Shown here: positions 3,272-16,539 of the stretch, one piece after another
Layout of the letters: the number at the start of each line of letters is the position of its first letter
How positions within the stretch are numbered: the stretch's first letter is position 1
Program-made: the position numbers and the translations under genes
Assembly (NCBI GenBank): GCA_002269645.1
Contig: NIVC01000633.1
Coordinates: 248,001 to 312,000 of the forward strand
Length of the DNA: 64,000 bases
DNA from: Macrostomum lignano
Lineage: Eukaryota
Reading direction: 5' to 3'
The notes under the pieces: model-generated
What the model was told of the DNA's origin: nothing
The model's database searches: none
What the model saw: the letters and a program-made list of their open reading frames with translations, nothing else

Positions 3272-4527
3272 CAATCACAATATACTAAATCTCTAAGGTT
3301 TGTCTGACTGGTATTTCAGTCTTCATCAGCACAATCTTCACAATATACTTAAAACTCCATTAGAAACTGCGATCCATTGGTGCGGCGCCGGCGTCAGCCA
3401 GCAGGGAGTCGACGTAACGCCGAGTGCGCGCCTGCCCCCGCTAGTAGGATGTCTGCAGCATCAGAAGCAGAACCTCGAGTATGAATAAATGGCTATTGAG
3501 TGTGAGGAATGGCTATTGAGTGTTAAGAAATGGCTATATTGAGTGTGAGAAAATGGCTATTGAGTGTTAGGGAATATATGGCTATTGAGTGTGACTTCTC
3601 ACTATTGTTTCTAACTCATTCGAACAAGTTCTTCTAATCATAAAAGTGAAAGCTATGGGAAATTTTTCTGTAGTTGAACTGTTTCAACTGTGTTCAGATG
3701 AAAAAAACAGCCTTAATCGTAAGTGGCTACTAACAGCAGGGAGCGAAGCTGTTAATTTTTGCGCGTGGGTCTAATTGCCAGTCTACTGATCAGTTCCACT
3801 ATGACTGGCAGGCATCGGGAGATGGCACAGATTTGAGGGTTTAAAGGCTATAAAAGTACAAGTACAAAGTGGAAAATACATAAAAGTGCATGTTGTACCT
3901 TAGTTAACCAGTGGAATCGAATGGTCAATGTTTGCAAAATCCTGTTAGCCAACATTATCACCTGTTCACTGCTTACTGAGCAAAGAGAAAGAAATGTGCG
4001 ACAGGTTTGGCCACAAGCATTGAAATATTCTGTAATATTAGCTCGAGTTCACACATCACAACCAGTGCAGCTTGGCTCTCAGCAAGCCGTTCATCCCGCT
4101 TATTCACTCAGTCCATCGTGCACTGCCCACACAGCAGCTGCAGCTCTCTGTCGGGTCAACAAAACACCAGCTTGTTTTCGTCGAAGCGTTTGCCATTGTG
4201 CAAAGCCAAACTCATGGTTTGCATCGTCATGACTTGCGAATCCTGCAGCGTGTCGCACTCGAACTTGTCGATGGAGAACCCCTTCGACAAGCGGGAGGCT
4301 GGCCAGACCAGCTTTGACGCGTTGGCTGCAGTGGCACTGCTGCCGAGAACGTGCTTCGATAGCTGGCAAAACTTGCCCACCGCCGCCAGAACATGGCGGA
4401 ACTCCTTCAGCTCGGCGAGAAAATCGTCGCCCAAGGCGCGTATACGATGCAGGAGTCTGGCCTCCGCAGCTTCGTAAAGTTGGAAGTCGACTGGACTCCA
4501 GCGACGGTGAAGCTCGACGAGGTCGGG

Positions 4528-5183
4528 ACTACTATATGAACCCGTAAGGCTTGATTTTGCGAAGGTCCGTCGGGCTGATGTCGGCCTCTAGCACCGCGGC
4601 AAGGTGCTCCCTCGGGGTGTACCACCTCCCCCGGGGTGTACCTCCAGCGGGGTGGGCGTCCAGCAAGTGTACCTCCAGCGGGGTGGGCCTCCCGCGAGTG
4701 TACATCCGGCCGGCTGGGCGTCCAGCGAGTGTACCTTCAGCGCATGGGCCTCCCTCGGGGTGTACATCCGGCGGGGGGATTCCCGCCCCTCCCACCAATG
4801 TCGTGTGCACGCGGTTAGTGTAGGAAGGAAACCCCCGATGCTGACGCAGCCCTGTACACTGAGCAACCGGCCCCCATGCGGGGGACAGAGAGCAGCCCCT
4901 GTAGCAGGAGGGGTAGTGCGTGGAGAGCCGCCATCCCCCTGTAGCAAGGGACAGATAACAGGCGGCCCCCTGTAGCAGTATGAGGTGGGGTACAAAGAGA
5001 CACGGGGTGCTGGGACAGAGAGTGCGTGGAGGCACCCTGCGCTGCCCTGGCATGTCGCAGCACGCGGCGTGGACAGAGAGGGAGTGTGAGTCACACGGAG
5101 GGACAGAGAGCTTCCCCAGGCCGGGGTGGTAGAGGGACAGACCGGCGGTGAGTGATAGAGAGCTCCCCCCAGGGCAGTAGAGG
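4528..5183. repeat. Left terminal inverted repeat (~655 bp)
   Basis: Reverse complement of 14384-15051; for example TTGATTTTGCGAAGGTCCGTCGGGCTGATGTCGGCCTCTAGCACCGCGGCAAGGTGCTCCCTCGGGG matches exactly. The inner boundary is approximate. Confidence 0.93.
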
Positions 5184-5264
5184 ACTTGAAAAGAAAAAAC
5201 ACGTATTTTAGTTGTTTCAGGTTCAGGCCATCCGGCAAACAGAGCAAAGCTCTCCAACAGTGTT

Positions 5265-5918
5265 TTATTTAGCATAAACTACGGGGTAGCGCCCCAACAC
5301 ATTAGCATAGTAGCGAACAGATGCGTTCTGCAAGCAATTAACAATCAAGTAGGAGTAGGGCTCCCTAGTGGCGTCTTCGTACATTTGAACAAAACTTTTT
5401 GGGTTAGCGGGGACAAGCTGCTTTGCAATATGGGCGACTGTACTAACGTCCCGTACATTGCGGAACAATACAAGGTAGTTTGCGTTAAGGGATTGAGTGC
5501 GGTGCTCCTTGCCCTTGGCAAACAGGTTTTGTACAAGGTACCAAAGCCGGAATCCCACATGGCTGACTTTGCGAGTGAAAAATGCGGTAAAAGCAGCGTT
5601 TTTTTCCATGGCTTGCATTTGATCATCGACAACGAGTAGAATATTCGGAGCGGGAACATAGGTTTCAGGGTTAAATGTAGACGAGCGAAAATTGACAGGG
5701 TACGGTAATTCAAACAGTTCCGGGTCTGGATAGTGCCCAAACCAATCAACGCGAACAGGCTTAGGGTCCTGAAAAAACTCGTTTCGCAGCAATTCTTTAA
5801 CAAGAGTTGTTTTTCCGCTCTGGTTAACACCAGCAAAAATCGCCGAAGTATTTGGAGCAAACTTTAGAGCGTCAGGATCAATTGTTTGGTACATTTTCAG
5901 GGCGAGTTGACACTCCAA
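5265..5918 (-). CDS. A32/FtsK-like genome-packaging ATPase (likely ATG at 5894)
   Basis: Walker A GVNQSGKT, Walker B LLVVDD, then RKVSH..FRLWYLVQNLF..RTQSLNANYLVLFRNVRD, typical of Polinton packaging ATPases. Confidence 0.92.
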   Translation of the reverse strand: MECQLALKMYQTIDPDALKFAPNTSAIFAGVNQSGKTTLVKELLRNEFFQDPKPVRVDWFGHYPDPELFELPYPVNFRSSTFNPETYVPAPNILLVVDDQMQAMEKNAAFTAFFTRKVSHVGFRLWYLVQNLFAKGKEHRTQSLNANYLVLFRNVRDVSTVAHIAKQLVPANPKSFVQMYEDATREPYSYLIVNCLQNASVRYYANVLGRYPVVYAK

Positions 5919-14318: not shown

Positions 14319-14383
14319 ACAGAGGGTTTGTACACTGCTTCTATTTATGGTTGAAATGACACGTTGCTCGCGGCCTGTCTGTC

Positions 14384-15051
14384 CCTCTGCAGCCTGGGGA
14401 GCTCTCTATCACTCACCGCCGGTCTGTCCCACGCCTCCAGACTGGGCCGCTCTCTCCGCGGGGGGTGTGATTCATACTGCCTCTCTGTCCACGCCGCGTG
14501 CTGCGACATGCCAGGGCAGCGCAGGGTGCGAGACCCACTCTCTGTCCCAGCACCCCGTGTCTCTTTGTACCCCACCTCATACTGCTACAGGGGGCCGCCT
14601 GTTATCTGTCCCTTGCTACAGGGGGATGGCGGCTCTCCACGCACTACCCCTCCTGCTACAGGGGCTGCTCTCTGTCCCCAGCTACAGGGCTGCTCTCTGT
14701 CCCCCGCATGGGGGGCCGGTTGCTCAGTGTACAGGGCTGCGTCAGCATCGGGGGTTTCCTTCCTACACTAACCGCGTGCACACGACATTGGTGGGAGGGG
14801 CGGGAATCCCCCGCCGGATGTACACCCCGAGGGAGGCCCATGCGCTGAAGGTACACTCGCTGGACGCCCACCCTGCCGGATGTACACTCGCAGGAGGCCC
14901 ACCCCGCTGGAGGTACACTCGCTGGACGCCCACCCCGCTGGAGGTACACCCCGGGTGTACACCCCGAGGGAGCACCTTGCCGCGGTGCTAGAGGCCGACA
15001 TCAGCCCGACGGACCTTCGCAAAATCAACGGATCTACCGGCCTATAGTAGT
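14384..15051. repeat. Right terminal inverted repeat (~668 bp)
   Basis: Imperfect inverted copy of 4528-5183. Confidence 0.93.
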
Positions 15052-16539
15052 GTCGGGCCGGTCGGTCTCATTAATTTCTCTGCAGGTTAGGAATGAGAGA
15101 ACTGGAAATCTTTGAAGCTTTACAGCTTCGGTTTCAGTGCTTACAAGCTGTTAATACTTGCATTTACATGTAGGCCCAGTGTGAACAAGGATGAAGCTAG
15201 AGGACAATCAGTTTATGCAGGGCGGTAATAACTTCTTCTAGGGGTCGAACTGCACAAATGTAGAGCATTTGAGATCTTGCCAATGCGAGTACACTACGAG
15301 ATTTACACAATTTGCTGCGAACCAAACTCAGGTATTACAAATTTCTAAGATCCCAATTATGTTCAGAATGGCAGCACACACATCAGATTAAGTAAGGCAT
15401 GACTTTGTCACCTGTTTCTCTGCGCTTCTCCCTGAACTCTAAATGCAATTTTTCAAATCATAAATAAACAACATACATCTGAATCTGTTACACACACACT
15501 TGTAGCGATTGGAGTTGATCTTATAGTACAGGATGTCCTTAACGCTCCAGTTCATGAGACGGCGCAGCAGAACCAGCGACTCGTCGAAGTGCTCAACCAC
15601 GAAAATCAGGTCGATCTCTTGGAAAACTCGCTTGATAAACTCATGAACGTTGGAGCCTTCGACGTATCCCAAGTCAGTCGCCATGGAGTTCTTGGTCATG
15701 CTGCGGTTGCCGATGTTACAATTTTCATTGACAAATGGCCGGTAATGTTTCGACCTGAACACATGGTCATAGTGACTGATGTTCTTGAGGAATCTCTCGA
15801 ATGCTCCAGCGGCTTTGCCGACTCCTGCAATAGAGTTTAAACTGTAGTACTGTTTACCTCAGATGACACCCATTATTGTGCTCAAGCTTGCTCACCAGCC
15901 CAGGAAGAAAATTTGAAGAAATGAAACACAGACTGCAGGTATTGAAACGGCCGCCTGACCCCAGCCAGCAGCGCCATGTCGGGTGGCATCAGCTGTGTGA
16001 AGAAGGTCCTGTTGTGGATCACGTGGCCACTGAACACATTCGGACGCGTTGCGTTCTTTGATAGAGTCACGTATCTCAGCTGCGGTGCCCAAAGCCAGCC
16101 GTAGTAGTGCTTGCCAGGCAGCGGCAGAGCGAGTGTGAGGTTGTGGGCCAACGCAAACCTGATGAGGACGGCGTGCATGGTGGAGCTGGCAGCTTTGTGC
16201 ACCTTGATGTGTGCGATGTTAACACGAAAAGCCGAGTTATCCCTGATGGTCCGCTGACTGCGCCAGTGCATCCTGCCCAAGTGCGCACCTATGCCGAGCA
16301 CGAGCAGCACACACAGAGCGAGAAAAAGCCGGAAGAACCGTTGTGGGTAGAAGTGCTTCATTTTCTGAAATGATTTACGGTTGGTTGCTAAGCGTACACA
16401 ACTTGGCCGCCCAAGCGACCCCCAGGCCGCTACTAAAGGGCTCTGCGAGACTCCAGAACCCGCGGCAGGTTCGCCTATGCCTTCGCCGCCGCACTGGCAG
16501 AGTCCGCGAGCACTAGCAACTATTCCGAAATAAGGACCG

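What the first reader, a model, noticed from the sequence alone, without database searches (positions are those of the whole stretch)
4156..16361. Virus inserted inside a coding exon of a sulfotransferase; pre-insertion allele can be rebuilt exactly
Seen: on the minus strand, exon 3 starts AG|A GAA ATT AAT GAG ACC GAC CGG CCC GAC (15079-15052), the element follows, and the frame resumes CTC GTC GAG CTT CAC at 4521. The TSD is exactly the two codons Pro-Asp. The two flanking pieces of this exon still read without stops. Inference: the integrase was active recently and knocked out this GAL3ST allele, so the insertion is probably polymorphic or buffered by paralogues or extra chromosome copies.
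Basis: seen in the sequence. Interest (0 to 1): 0.7.

Follow-up and report, generated by a model that had tools for sequence, protein, structure and literature searches.

The report
Defective Maverick virus splitting a sulfotransferase exon
A 10.5-kb virus-like mobile element of the Maverick/Polinton kind sits inside the last coding exon of an invertebrate galactose-3-O-sulfotransferase gene, cutting off the final third of the enzyme. This copy has no polymerase gene and three broken core genes, so it is a clean but fairly ordinary example of a transposon knocking out a gene.

Summary
Window 4528-15051 (10,524 bp) is a discrete insert. It has 658/671-bp terminal inverted repeats, termini ACTACTATA.../...TATAGTAGT and a perfect 6-bp direct repeat, GTCGGG (4522-4527 and 15052-15057).

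On the minus strand that repeat reads Pro-Asp in the frame of exon 3 of a GAL3ST-family gene. Tested apart against a profile of 104 homologues, the upstream exons match positions 54-268 and the downstream piece matches 276-372. The two flanks therefore abut, with nothing lost.

The insert is a Maverick/Polinton-type endogenous virus. It carries:
- a double jelly-roll capsid protein (Foldseek E about 1e-17 to PBCV-1, Sputnik and mavirus capsids);
- an adenain-like protease;
- an A32-type ATPase;
- an rve integrase;
- the family's conserved gene order.

- The integrase needs three frame changes.
- Two more core genes are broken.
- The family's protein-primed polymerase gene is absent without trace.
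- The inverted repeats are 96% identical, with 17 indels.

This copy is therefore defective, and the insertion need not be very recent. Polymorphism and buffering by paralogues cannot be tested from one window. The element is a new member of a known kind, of modest interest. Its Fic-domain cargo gene is a small extra.

The parts
15896..16361 (-). Host GAL3ST-family gene, exon 1 (ATG at 16361; hydrophobic N-terminal anchor; sulfotransferase core begins)
   Evidence: Pfam Gal-3-0_sulfotr 7.8e-20. GT donor at 15895-15894. 591 homologues in the representative library.
15500..15824 (-). Host gene, exon 2
   Evidence: Pfam Gal-3-0_sulfotr 2.6e-14 alone. Joined to exon 1 it gives one continuous match of 130 bits. 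AG acceptor and GT donor read.
15052..15079 (-). Host gene, exon 3, upstream piece (28 nt); its last 6 nt (15057-15052) are one copy of the target-site duplication, read as Pro-Asp
   Evidence: The frame set by exon 2 (phase 2) reads K-EINETDRPD.
4156..4527 (-). Host gene, exon 3, downstream piece; it starts with the second copy of the duplication (4527-4522) and ends with stop TGA (4158-4156)
   Evidence: A 123-codon open frame. It matches positions 276-372 of a profile of 104 GAL3ST homologues, 68.7 bits. GC3 0.72, as in exons 1-2.
4528..15051 (-). Inserted Maverick/Polinton-type element, 10,524 bp; all recognised genes lie on the minus strand, co-oriented with the host gene
   Evidence: 6-bp direct repeat GTCGGG flush with inverted termini. 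Inverted repeats. Gene content.
4528..5185 (.). Left terminal inverted repeat (658 bp), with 31-bp tandem subrepeats at about 4629-4783
14381..15051 (.). Right terminal inverted repeat (671 bp), with 31-bp tandem subrepeats at about 14809-14963
   Evidence: 613 matches, 24 mismatches and 17 gap events against the left arm.
5265..5918 (-). Packaging ATPase (A32/IVa2 type), one intact frame
   Evidence: 83% identical to L006. One piece covers family profile 12-206 of 219. 13 of 22 family members hit Pfam Pox_A32 and 10 hit Adeno_IVa2. The window protein itself has no Pfam hit.
5929..6366 (-). Adenain-like cysteine protease, one intact frame
   Evidence: The family profile hits ASFV S273R at 1.9e-11 and adenovirus proteinase at 8.6e-8. 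One piece covers profile 9-157 of 159.
6363..7646 (-). Major capsid protein (double jelly roll), 427 aa, intact
   Evidence: AF2 model pLDDT 79.8, pTM 0.81. Foldseek against PDB: PBCV-1 Vp54, Sputnik and mavirus capsid proteins, E 3.5e-17 to 3e-16, TM about 0.6. 362+ metagenomic relatives. Animal-genome relatives in Patiria miniata and Ephemera danica.
7676..8020 (-). Small conserved protein between the minor and major capsid genes (the position of 'PW' in vertebrate Mavericks), intact
   Evidence: One piece, family profile 38-144 of 157, E 2e-30. Gene order. Module description in PMC8097293.
8064..9199 (-). Minor-capsid-like gene, named by position and family only; broken by one frame change and one partial internal duplication
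   Evidence: A single ORF of 245-300 aa in 44 relatives. The window maps to their profile in two frames, with one profile stretch covered twice. No PDB or Pfam match for the family, so the fold is not shown.
9203..10339 (-). Integrase (rve core plus C-terminal part); broken by three frame changes; otherwise collinear and complete
   Evidence: Pfam rve 5.8e-10. Four collinear pieces in frames 0, 2, 1, 0 cover profile 12-352 of 357, built from 33 relatives. Three-frame reading.
10340..11037 (-). Conserved gene of unknown function that precedes the integrase in relatives (about 250 aa); broken and only partly recognisable
   Evidence: Two pieces in two frames cover only parts of a 257-position profile from 23 relatives. 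Several stops in every frame.
11040..11429 (-). Small conserved protein (the position of 'PZ' in vertebrate Mavericks), intact
   Evidence: One piece, profile 21-126 of 128, E 1e-28. Found in 31 related loci.
11468..13529 (-). Accessory region of five ORFs (172, 226, 89, 85 and 125 aa) with no relatives among the 88 fetched loci; it lies in the stretch that the polymerase and ATPase genes occupy, upstream of the PZ-like gene, in most relatives
   Evidence: The only hit is a borderline Pfam TBP match for 11468-11986 (22.8 bits against a cut-off of 22.9). The AF2 model of that ORF is unusable (pLDDT 41).
13623..14318 (-). Fic-domain protein (cargo gene), intact, catalytic loop HPFSDGNGRTAR present
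   Evidence: Pfam Fic 4.1e-14, profile 2-93 of 93. Best solved relatives are animal FICD, 5e-7. One relative, L008, also carries a Fic gene.

Best explanation
An endogenous Maverick/Polinton-type virus-like element integrated into exon 3 of a three-exon galactose-3-O-sulfotransferase-family gene of an unidentified invertebrate animal. The integration was made by an rve-type (retrovirus-like) integrase, which left the staggered-cut signature of this class: a 6-bp target-site duplication next to terminal inverted repeats.

The insertion falls between two codons. The duplication is read as Pro-Asp on both sides, and the two halves of the exon keep their frame. As it stands, the host reading frame runs five codons into the element and stops. 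The product would lack the last 121 residues of the conserved sulfotransferase domain, so this allele is most likely null (inferred).

The copy itself is defective:
- No polymerase gene.
- An integrase gene with three frame changes.
- A minor-capsid-like gene with one frame change and an internal duplication.
- A decayed gene upstream of the integrase.
- The capsid protein, protease, ATPase and two small conserved genes remain intact.

Shown: the insertion, its exact bounds, the collinearity of the flanks, the identity of the genes, and the count of breaks. Inferred: that the integrase came from this copy before it decayed or from another copy in trans, that the insertion is some way from brand-new, and that the allele is a loss of function.
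For: Bounds and signature:
- The 6-bp repeat GTCGGG lies flush with inverted termini.
- Inverted repeats of 658/671 bp.

Host gene:
- Pfam Gal-3-0_sulfotr, 130 bits, on the spliced upstream exons.
- On a 104-sequence family profile the upstream piece ends at position 268 and the downstream piece starts at 276.
- GC3 is the same in both flanks and differs from the element.
- The closest homologues are from Branchiostoma, Helobdella, Liolophura and Macrostomum, at about 34% identity.

Element:
- Double jelly-roll capsid protein.
- Adenain-like protease.
- A32/IVa2-type ATPase family.
- rve integrase.
- The gene order PZ-like, unnamed gene, integrase, minor capsid-like, PW-like, capsid, protease is shared with 20 or more relatives. 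It matches the module order described for vertebrate Mavericks (PMC8097293).
- The same paper reports 6-bp duplications, inverted repeats of 46-1,447 bp and a trinucleotide repeated twice at the termini.

Defects.
Against: - By definition Polintons encode a protein-primed polymerase (PMC5499653). This copy has none, so it is a derivative and not a full member.
- The terminal motif is (ACT)2...(AGT)2. It is not the (AGT)2//(ACT)2 or (AG)3//(CT)3 reported for vertebrates.
- A 14-nt block just inside each terminus does not match between the two arms.
- The minor-capsid assignment rests on position and family conservation only.
- Loss of function of the host allele is inferred, not measured.
- The host species and the rest of its genome are not available. 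Copy number, helper copies and allele frequency are therefore unknown.
- The frame changes could in principle be assembly errors, although they do not lie in long homopolymers.
Confidence: 0.85

Rival explanations
1. One reading: a very recent insertion made by the element's own, currently active integrase, so the allele is probably still polymorphic in the population.
For: - Perfect 6-bp duplication.
- Both exon halves are stop-free with all profile positions retained.
- Five element genes, 1,032 codons in all, are intact.
- Element-interior CpG observed/expected is 1.0, against 0.7-0.8 in the host flanks.
- Element GC3 is not shifted towards the host value.
Against: - The integrase gene has three frame changes.
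- Two other core genes are broken.
- There is no polymerase gene.
- The inverted repeats are 96.2% identical with 17 gap events.
- A 1.2-kb host coding sequence can stay free of stops for a long time after inactivation, so intact flanks date little.
Confidence: 0.15
2. The lack of a polymerase is a property of a small lineage and not a deletion in this one copy. On this reading the element is a 10.5-kb capsid-encoding derivative that carries Fic and other accessory genes and depends on polymerase-bearing relatives or on the host for replication.
For: - The two nearest relatives (L001 and L006, 80-81% capsid identity) share the unusual position of the ATPase gene after the protease. The module that normally holds polymerase and ATPase was therefore already rearranged in the lineage.
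- No polymerase remnant at all in the window.
- The left-hand region holds coherent, stop-free ORFs and not debris.
- Three of 21 long related loci also show no polymerase.
Against: - L001 and L006 are contigs of only 3.4-3.8 kb that end just after the ATPase gene, so their polymerase status is unknown.
- In two relatives (L049, L072) the polymerase lies beyond the protease on the other strand. Rearrangement therefore does not imply loss.
- This copy is visibly decayed elsewhere, so a private deletion is the simpler reading.
Confidence: 0.2
3. Assembly artefact: the contig joins two different GAL3ST paralogues, or a free viral genome and a host locus, through a repeated element.
For: - The window is extremely rich in tandem repeats, the kind of region where assemblies fail.
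- The host genome cannot be inspected.
Against: - A chimera would not produce an identical 6-bp duplication at both junctions, flush with inverted termini.
- It would not produce two flanks that abut on the family profile at positions 268 and 276 with the same frame and the same GC3.
Confidence: 0.03
4. The frame changes in the integrase and other genes are sequencing or assembly errors, and the copy is in fact intact apart from the missing polymerase.
For: Three frame changes fall close together within one gene with a net shift of zero. This is an unusual pattern for independent decay.
Against: - The frame-change zones hold homopolymers of only 3-5 nt, no longer than the element's background.
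- The gene upstream of the integrase is disrupted by several stops in all frames, not only by frame changes.
- The inverted repeats also carry many indels.
Confidence: 0.1

Closest known systems
Mavericks/Polintons of animals (polintoviruses, 'Eupolintoviridae'; vertebrate Mavericks of Barreat and Katzourakis 2021, PMC8097293)
   Same: - 6-bp target-site duplication.
- Terminal inverted repeats of several hundred bp.
- A trinucleotide repeated twice at each terminus.
- rve integrase, double jelly-roll capsid protein, adenain-like protease and A32-type ATPase.
- The block integrase, minor capsid, PW, major capsid, protease in that order.
- An accessory-gene region.
- Most genomic copies are mutationally degraded.
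   Different: - No protein-primed polymerase gene.
- 10.5 kb, below the 12.7-24.6 kb reported for intact vertebrate elements.
- The ATPase gene lies after the protease and not beside the polymerase.
- The terminal motif is (ACT)2...(AGT)2.
- The element carries a Fic-domain gene.
- The capsid protein is only 30-36% identical to most relatives found.
Metagenomic and genomic relatives found here (for example L068, L074, L064, L047, L082; Patiria miniata and Ephemera danica loci)
   Same: The same capsid family (E down to 1e-90), with the same nine-gene core order minus the polymerase. One relative (L008) also carries Fic.
   Different: 18 of 21 relatives held over at least 8 kb carry a 1,100-1,670-aa polymerase-family ORF (DNA_pol_B_2 in L047 and L082). 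The window element does not.
Polinton insertions that reshaped the eri-6/7 locus in wild Caenorhabditis elegans (Zhang, Felix and Andersen 2024, PMC11414722)
   Same: An element of the same class alters the structure of a host protein-coding gene, and its inverted repeats remain as landmarks.
   Different: There, multiple insertions caused inversions, and function is rescued by trans-splicing. Here a single simple insertion splits one exon, and no rescue mechanism is evident.
Adintoviruses (Starrett et al. 2021, PMC8502044) and polinton-like viruses
   Same: Adenovirus-like virion module plus a retrovirus-like integrase in animal-associated sequences.
   Different: Adintoviruses are described with a type B polymerase. 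Most polinton-like viruses lack the integrase and occur with protists (PMC5499653). This element is chromosomal, flanked by a duplication, and has the integrase but not the polymerase.

Membership tests
Polinton/Maverick | [quoted passage not shown] | tested here: not met
   A profile of 11 polymerase-family ORFs from relatives finds nothing in any of the element's six frames (best 6.6 bits). tblastn finds nothing below E = 0.05. 18 of 21 long relatives have the gene. PMC5499653 states that all Polintons by definition encode it.
Polinton/Maverick | Retrovirus-like (rve) integrase gene | tested here: met
   Pfam rve 5.8e-10, above the cut-off. It is collinear with positions 12-352 of a 357-position family profile. 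The gene is present but broken by three frame changes.
Polinton/Maverick | Double jelly-roll major capsid protein | tested here: met
   AF2 pLDDT 79.8, pTM 0.81. Foldseek probability 1.00 to the PBCV-1, Sputnik and mavirus capsid proteins.
Polinton/Maverick | Minor (penton) capsid protein with a single jelly roll | tested here: inconclusive
   A conserved gene occupies the expected position between the integrase and the capsid gene in 44 relatives. The family profile has no PDB or Pfam match, and the window copy is broken, so no fold was tested.
Polinton/Maverick | A32/FtsK-type packaging ATPase | tested here: met
   At family level, 13 of 22 members hit Pox_A32 and 10 hit Adeno_IVa2. The window protein aligns full-length with them and keeps the invariant P-loop G-K.
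Polinton/Maverick | Adenain/Ulp1-like cysteine protease | tested here: met
   The family profile hits ASFV S273R at 1.9e-11 and adenovirus proteinase at 8.6e-8. H, D, Q and C columns are invariant or nearly so.
Polinton/Maverick | Long terminal inverted repeats and a 6-bp target-site duplication | tested here: met
   Arms of 658/671 bp, 96.2% identical. Perfect GTCGGG duplication. PMC8097293 reports the same features.
Polinton/Maverick | Conserved terminal motif (vertebrate elements: (AGT)2//(ACT)2 or (AG)3//(CT)3) | tested here: not met
   The termini read (ACT)2...(AGT)2. This is also a trinucleotide repeated twice, but a different one. The published motif comes from vertebrates only.
Galactose-3-O-sulfotransferase (Pfam PF06990) | Domain match above the curated threshold, continuous across the predicted exons | tested here: met
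   130 bits against a cut-off of 27, profile 61-277, on exons 1, 2 and 3a. The C-terminal piece matches positions 276-372 of a local family profile, 68.7 bits.
Galactose-3-O-sulfotransferase (Pfam PF06990) | Sulfotransferase activity on galactose 3-OH | not testable with these tools
   Sequence only. The closest homologues are about 34% identical.
Fic/DOC (Pfam PF02661) | Fic domain with a complete catalytic loop | tested here: met
   Pfam Fic 53.6 bits against a cut-off of 24, covering profile 2-93 of 93. The loop HPFSDGNGRTAR is read. FICD is the best solved relative.

The most novel reading that the evidence does not exclude
The element represents a distinct small lineage of animal Maverick-like viruses. 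On this reading the lineage has lost its own polymerase, moved the ATPase gene to the end of the capsid module, and acquired a FICD-like Fic AMPylase plus a set of lineage-specific genes, one with a borderline TBP-like match. It keeps a full particle-forming module and depends on polymerase-bearing relatives or the host for replication. That would make it a satellite-like derivative within the Maverick family and not a one-off deletion.
Probability: 0.15. Interest if true: 0.5.

Novelty: new member of a known kind. Interest (0 to 1): 0.3.

Why it matters
For the genome in hand, this explains why gene predictors will miss or truncate this sulfotransferase. It also gives a precisely bounded Maverick-type copy whose ends, duplication and gene order can seed annotation of the family in a poorly sampled invertebrate.

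More generally, exact exon-splitting insertions of Maverick/Polinton elements are rarely documented base by base. This one shows the class's integration signature in a coding context.

Two features may interest people working on these viruses: the Fic-domain cargo, which also occurs in one metagenomic relative, and the polymerase-less layout. Neither changes the picture of how such elements work.

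Tried and rejected
Searches that led nowhere:
- Word-indexed homologue searches with the downstream exon piece and with exon 1 found nothing. The host protein is too divergent.
- The full HMMER search with exon 1 worked. Its hits were used to build the local profile.
- Pfam alone does not recognise the downstream exon piece. PDB holds no relative of either host piece.
- An exact-sequence look-up of the window's capsid protein found no source record.
- IMG/VR holds no relative of the capsid protein.
- PHROGs recognised only the Fic protein.
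- No Pfam or PDB match for the minor-capsid-like family.
- The AF2 model of the 172-aa ORF with a borderline TBP hit had pLDDT 41 and was not searched further.
- No tRNA or Rfam family anywhere in the window.

Considered and rejected:
- Alternative element bounds at the start of the perfectly matching part of the inverted repeats (4551/15028). These leave no direct repeat and break the collinearity of the host protein.
- A duplication longer or shorter than 6 bp. The adjacent bases differ on both sides.
- Homopolymer sequencing errors as the cause of the frame changes. There is no enrichment.

Broken genes were only mapped piecewise to profiles and the breaks counted.

Full report
**1. What is in the sequence**

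On the plus strand, the hexamer GTCGGG occurs at 4522-4527 and again at 15052-15057. Immediately inside these copies the sequence reads ACTACTATA... on the left and ...TATAGTAGT on the right, which are inverted termini.

- The bases next to the hexamers differ on both sides, so the direct repeat is exactly 6 bp. The chance of a 6/6 match at a fixed pair of positions is about 1 in 4,096.
- The insert is therefore 4528-15051, or 10,524 bp.
- Its ends are long inverted repeats. 4528-5185 aligns with the reverse complement of 14381-15051 with 613 matches, 24 mismatches and 17 gap events, or 96.2% identity over aligned columns.
- Each arm contains about four copies of a 31-bp tandem subrepeat.
- After the 9-nt termini, a 14-nt block differs completely between the arms. 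It is followed by 72 nt of perfect identity.

**2. The host gene**

All coordinates here are on the minus strand.

- An ATG at 16361 opens an exon that ends at 15896 with a G|GTGAGC donor.
- A 71-nt intron ends in TTGCAG. Exon 2 runs from 15824 to 15500 with an AA|GTGTGT donor.
- A 420-nt intron ends in a pyrimidine-rich tract and CTGCAG. Exon 3 starts at 15079.
- Joined as they stand, these exons give 273 residues with one continuous Pfam Gal-3-0_sulfotr match: 130 bits against a cut-off of 27, profile positions 61-277 of 402.
- The last two codons before the element are CCC GAC, which are the duplication.
- On the far side, CCC GAC at 4527-4522 is followed by 121 further codons in the same frame and a TGA at 4158-4156.

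**3. Whether the far side is the rest of the same gene**

I tested the two pieces apart.

- On its own, the downstream piece has no Pfam hit, no word-index homologues and no PDB relative.
- A full HMMER search with exon 1 returned 591 homologues. From 104 of these, each 330-520 aa long, I built a local profile of 407 positions.
- With filters off, the upstream piece matches positions 54-268 (242.5 bits).
- The downstream piece matches positions 276-372 (68.7 bits), starting at its second residue.
- The seven profile positions in between are filled by the eight residues INETDRPD that close the upstream piece.
- The flanks therefore abut on the family profile. Nothing is missing and nothing is extra except the duplicated Pro-Asp.
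- Third-position GC is 0.72, 0.70 and 0.72 in exon 1, exon 2 and the downstream piece. It is 0.41-0.52 in the element's genes.
- The alignment shows the conserved sulfotransferase motifs of exon 1 in place.
- Reading from exon 3 into the element gives five codons and a stop. The allele as it stands would lose the last 121 residues of the domain. That this is a null allele is an inference.

**4. The host organism**

The closest GAL3ST homologues are only about 34% identical. They come from Branchiostoma floridae, Helobdella robusta, Liolophura sinensis, Macrostomum lignano and Dimorphilus gyrociliatus.

With its GT-AG introns, the host is an invertebrate animal that is poorly represented in the databases. 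I could not name it.

The window has no second copy of the element and no GAL3ST paralogue.

**5. What the insert is**

All recognisable genes are on the minus strand, co-oriented with the host gene.

- **Capsid protein (6363-7646, 427 aa).** It has 362 or more relatives in metagenomes and in animal genomes, namely Patiria miniata and Ephemera danica. An AlphaFold2 model built on 11 sequences has pLDDT 79.8 and pTM 0.81. It matches the double jelly-roll capsid proteins of PBCV-1, Sputnik and mavirus at E 3.5e-17 to 3e-16 and TM about 0.6.
- **Protease (5929-6366).** A profile of this family hits the ASFV S273R protease (1.9e-11) and the adenovirus proteinase (8.6e-8).
- **ATPase (5265-5918).** Thirteen of 22 family members hit Pfam Pox_A32 and ten hit Adeno_IVa2.
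- **Integrase (9203-10339).** It carries an rve integrase core (5.8e-10).
- **Gene order.** In 20 or more relatives the order is polymerase, ATPase, small protein, roughly 250-aa protein, integrase, minor-capsid-like protein, small protein, capsid protein, protease. This matches the two-module layout described for vertebrate Mavericks, together with 6-bp duplications, inverted repeats of 46-1,447 bp and a trinucleotide repeated twice at each terminus (PMC8097293).
- **Polymerase in relatives.** The large ORF of the relatives is one family. In L047 and L082 it hits Pfam DNA_pol_B_2, the protein-primed type.

The insert is thus a Maverick/Polinton-type endogenous virus-like element.

**6. The state of this copy**

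Five conserved genes each map to their family profile in one unbroken frame: capsid protein, protease, ATPase and the two small proteins at 7676-8020 and 11040-11429. Three conserved genes are broken.

- The integrase maps collinearly to positions 12-352 of a 357-position profile, but in four pieces in frames 0, 2, 1, 0. That is three frame changes.
- The minor-capsid-like gene (8064-9199) has one frame change, and one stretch of the profile is covered twice. That is a partial internal duplication.
- The gene upstream of the integrase (10340-11037) is only partly recognisable. It maps in two frames and has stops in every frame.
- The polymerase gene is absent without trace, although 18 of 21 relatives held over at least 8 kb have it.
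- In its usual place lie five ORFs with no relatives among the fetched loci (11468-13529) and an intact Fic-domain gene (13623-14318). The Fic gene scores Pfam 4.1e-14, and its best solved relatives are animal FICD.
- In this copy and in its two nearest relatives (L001 and L006, 80-81% capsid identity), the ATPase gene sits after the protease.
- DNA-level similarity to those two relatives (70%) covers only the stretch from the 3' part of the minor-capsid-like gene through the ATPase gene. This suggests a mosaic history.
- The frame-change zones do not lie in unusually long homopolymers. Assembly error is therefore not indicated, though it is not excluded.

**7. How it most likely came about**

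An rve integrase joined the element's ends to a staggered 6-bp cut in exon 3. Repair of the gaps produced the duplication. This mechanism is inferred from the class, whereas the signature itself is shown.

The enzyme came either from this copy before it decayed or from another copy.

The arms of the inverted repeat differ by about 4% plus many indels, and three genes are broken. If the arms were identical at integration, that argues for an insertion that is not brand-new.

Other features argue that it is not ancient either:
- a perfect duplication;
- intact flanks;
- five intact genes;
- a CpG ratio of 1.0 inside the element against 0.7-0.8 outside;
- unameliorated codon usage.

I cannot put a number on the age without the host's mutation rate or a sister genome.

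**8.

The reading 'virus inserted in a coding exon, duplication equals two codons, flanks fit together' is supported.

'The integrase was active recently' is not supported by this copy's own integrase. 'Polymorphic or buffered' cannot be tested here.

The duplication is identical at both junctions, and the flanks share profile collinearity, frame and codon usage.

**9. Novelty and interest**

Maverick/Polinton insertions with 6-bp duplications are well known. Most genomic copies are degraded (PMC8097293), and Polinton insertions have been shown to reshape a host gene in C. elegans (PMC11414722).

This is a clean new example in an unsampled invertebrate, not a new kind of thing. By the strict definition (PMC5499653), the copy is a polymerase-less derivative and not a full Polinton.

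I found no paper in the library that links Fic domains with Mavericks. Fic recurs in one metagenomic relative, which is a minor point worth a note.

The most novel reading not excluded is a satellite-like, polymerase-less sublineage. I give it about 0.15.

Noticed in passing
window 4537-4550 and 15029-15042: Just inside the 9-nt inverted termini, a 14-nt block of equal length in both arms does not match at all. The next 72 nt are 100% identical. I found no inversion or complement relation between the two blocks.
   Followed up: partly
window 4629-4783 and 14809-14963: Each inverted repeat holds about four copies of a GC-rich 31-bp tandem subrepeat. The repeats are 65% GC, against 46.5% for the element's interior.
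   Followed up: partly
window 13623-14318 (-); locus L008 11924-12655 (-): An intact Fic-domain gene with a complete catalytic loop lies next to the right inverted repeat. Its best solved relatives are animal FICD. A Fic gene also sits beside the protease in one distant metagenomic relative. No paper in the library links Fic domains with Mavericks.
   Followed up: partly
window 11468-12548 (-): Two overlapping ORFs of 226 and 172 aa lie in different frames. The second has no ATG start and a borderline Pfam TBP match (22.8 bits against a cut-off of 22.9). Together they may be one accessory gene split by a frame change. The single-sequence structure model was unusable.
   Followed up: partly
window 5264-8350, compared with loci L001 and L006: Nucleotide similarity (70%) to the two closest relatives covers only the capsid module. 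The rest of the element has no DNA-level match to them, which suggests a mosaic (recombinant) origin.
   Followed up: partly
window 5265-11037: All gene breaks lie in three adjacent genes in the middle of the element. The five genes of the capsid and packaging side, 1,032 codons in all, have none. With so few independent events this clustering is not statistically compelling.
   Followed up: partly
loci L064, L065, L068, L069, L074 (ERZ17400xx assemblies): Contigs of about 11 kb carry the complete nine-gene core, polymerase included, at assembly coverage of 36-197x. This looks like abundant, possibly free, genomes of this virus family. No inverted repeats of 40 nt or more were found at the ends of the three about 11-kb contigs scanned (L068, L069, L074), so they are probably incomplete at the termini.
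   Followed up: partly
window 989-63349, for example 50352-55738, 26342-27919, 18072-19415, 33684-35012: The window is dominated by dozens of unrelated mini- and microsatellite arrays. Examples are a 22-nt unit of about 245 copies, (CTGT) of about 392 copies, and a 39-nt unit of about 35 copies. A telomere-like CCCTAAT array lies at 48510-48811. The gene sits in a very repeat-rich, possibly subtelomeric, region.
   Followed up: no
window 44214-45590 (-) and 30844-31407 (-): Two other coding fragments lie in the window. One is a superfamily-1 helicase C-terminal domain (Pfam AAA_12, 3.2e-41, plus AAA_11). The other is a saposin-B-like exon (SapB_2, 8.2e-8).
   Followed up: no
locus L007 (Patiria miniata, GCA_015706575.1, JADOBP010000014.1: 10615320-10636651): A sea-star chromosomal locus carries the integrase to protease block of the same family with no polymerase within 10 kb. 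Its capsid gene is annotated only as 'uncharacterized protein F54H12.2-like'. That name appears to label Maverick capsid genes in animal annotations.
   Followed up: no
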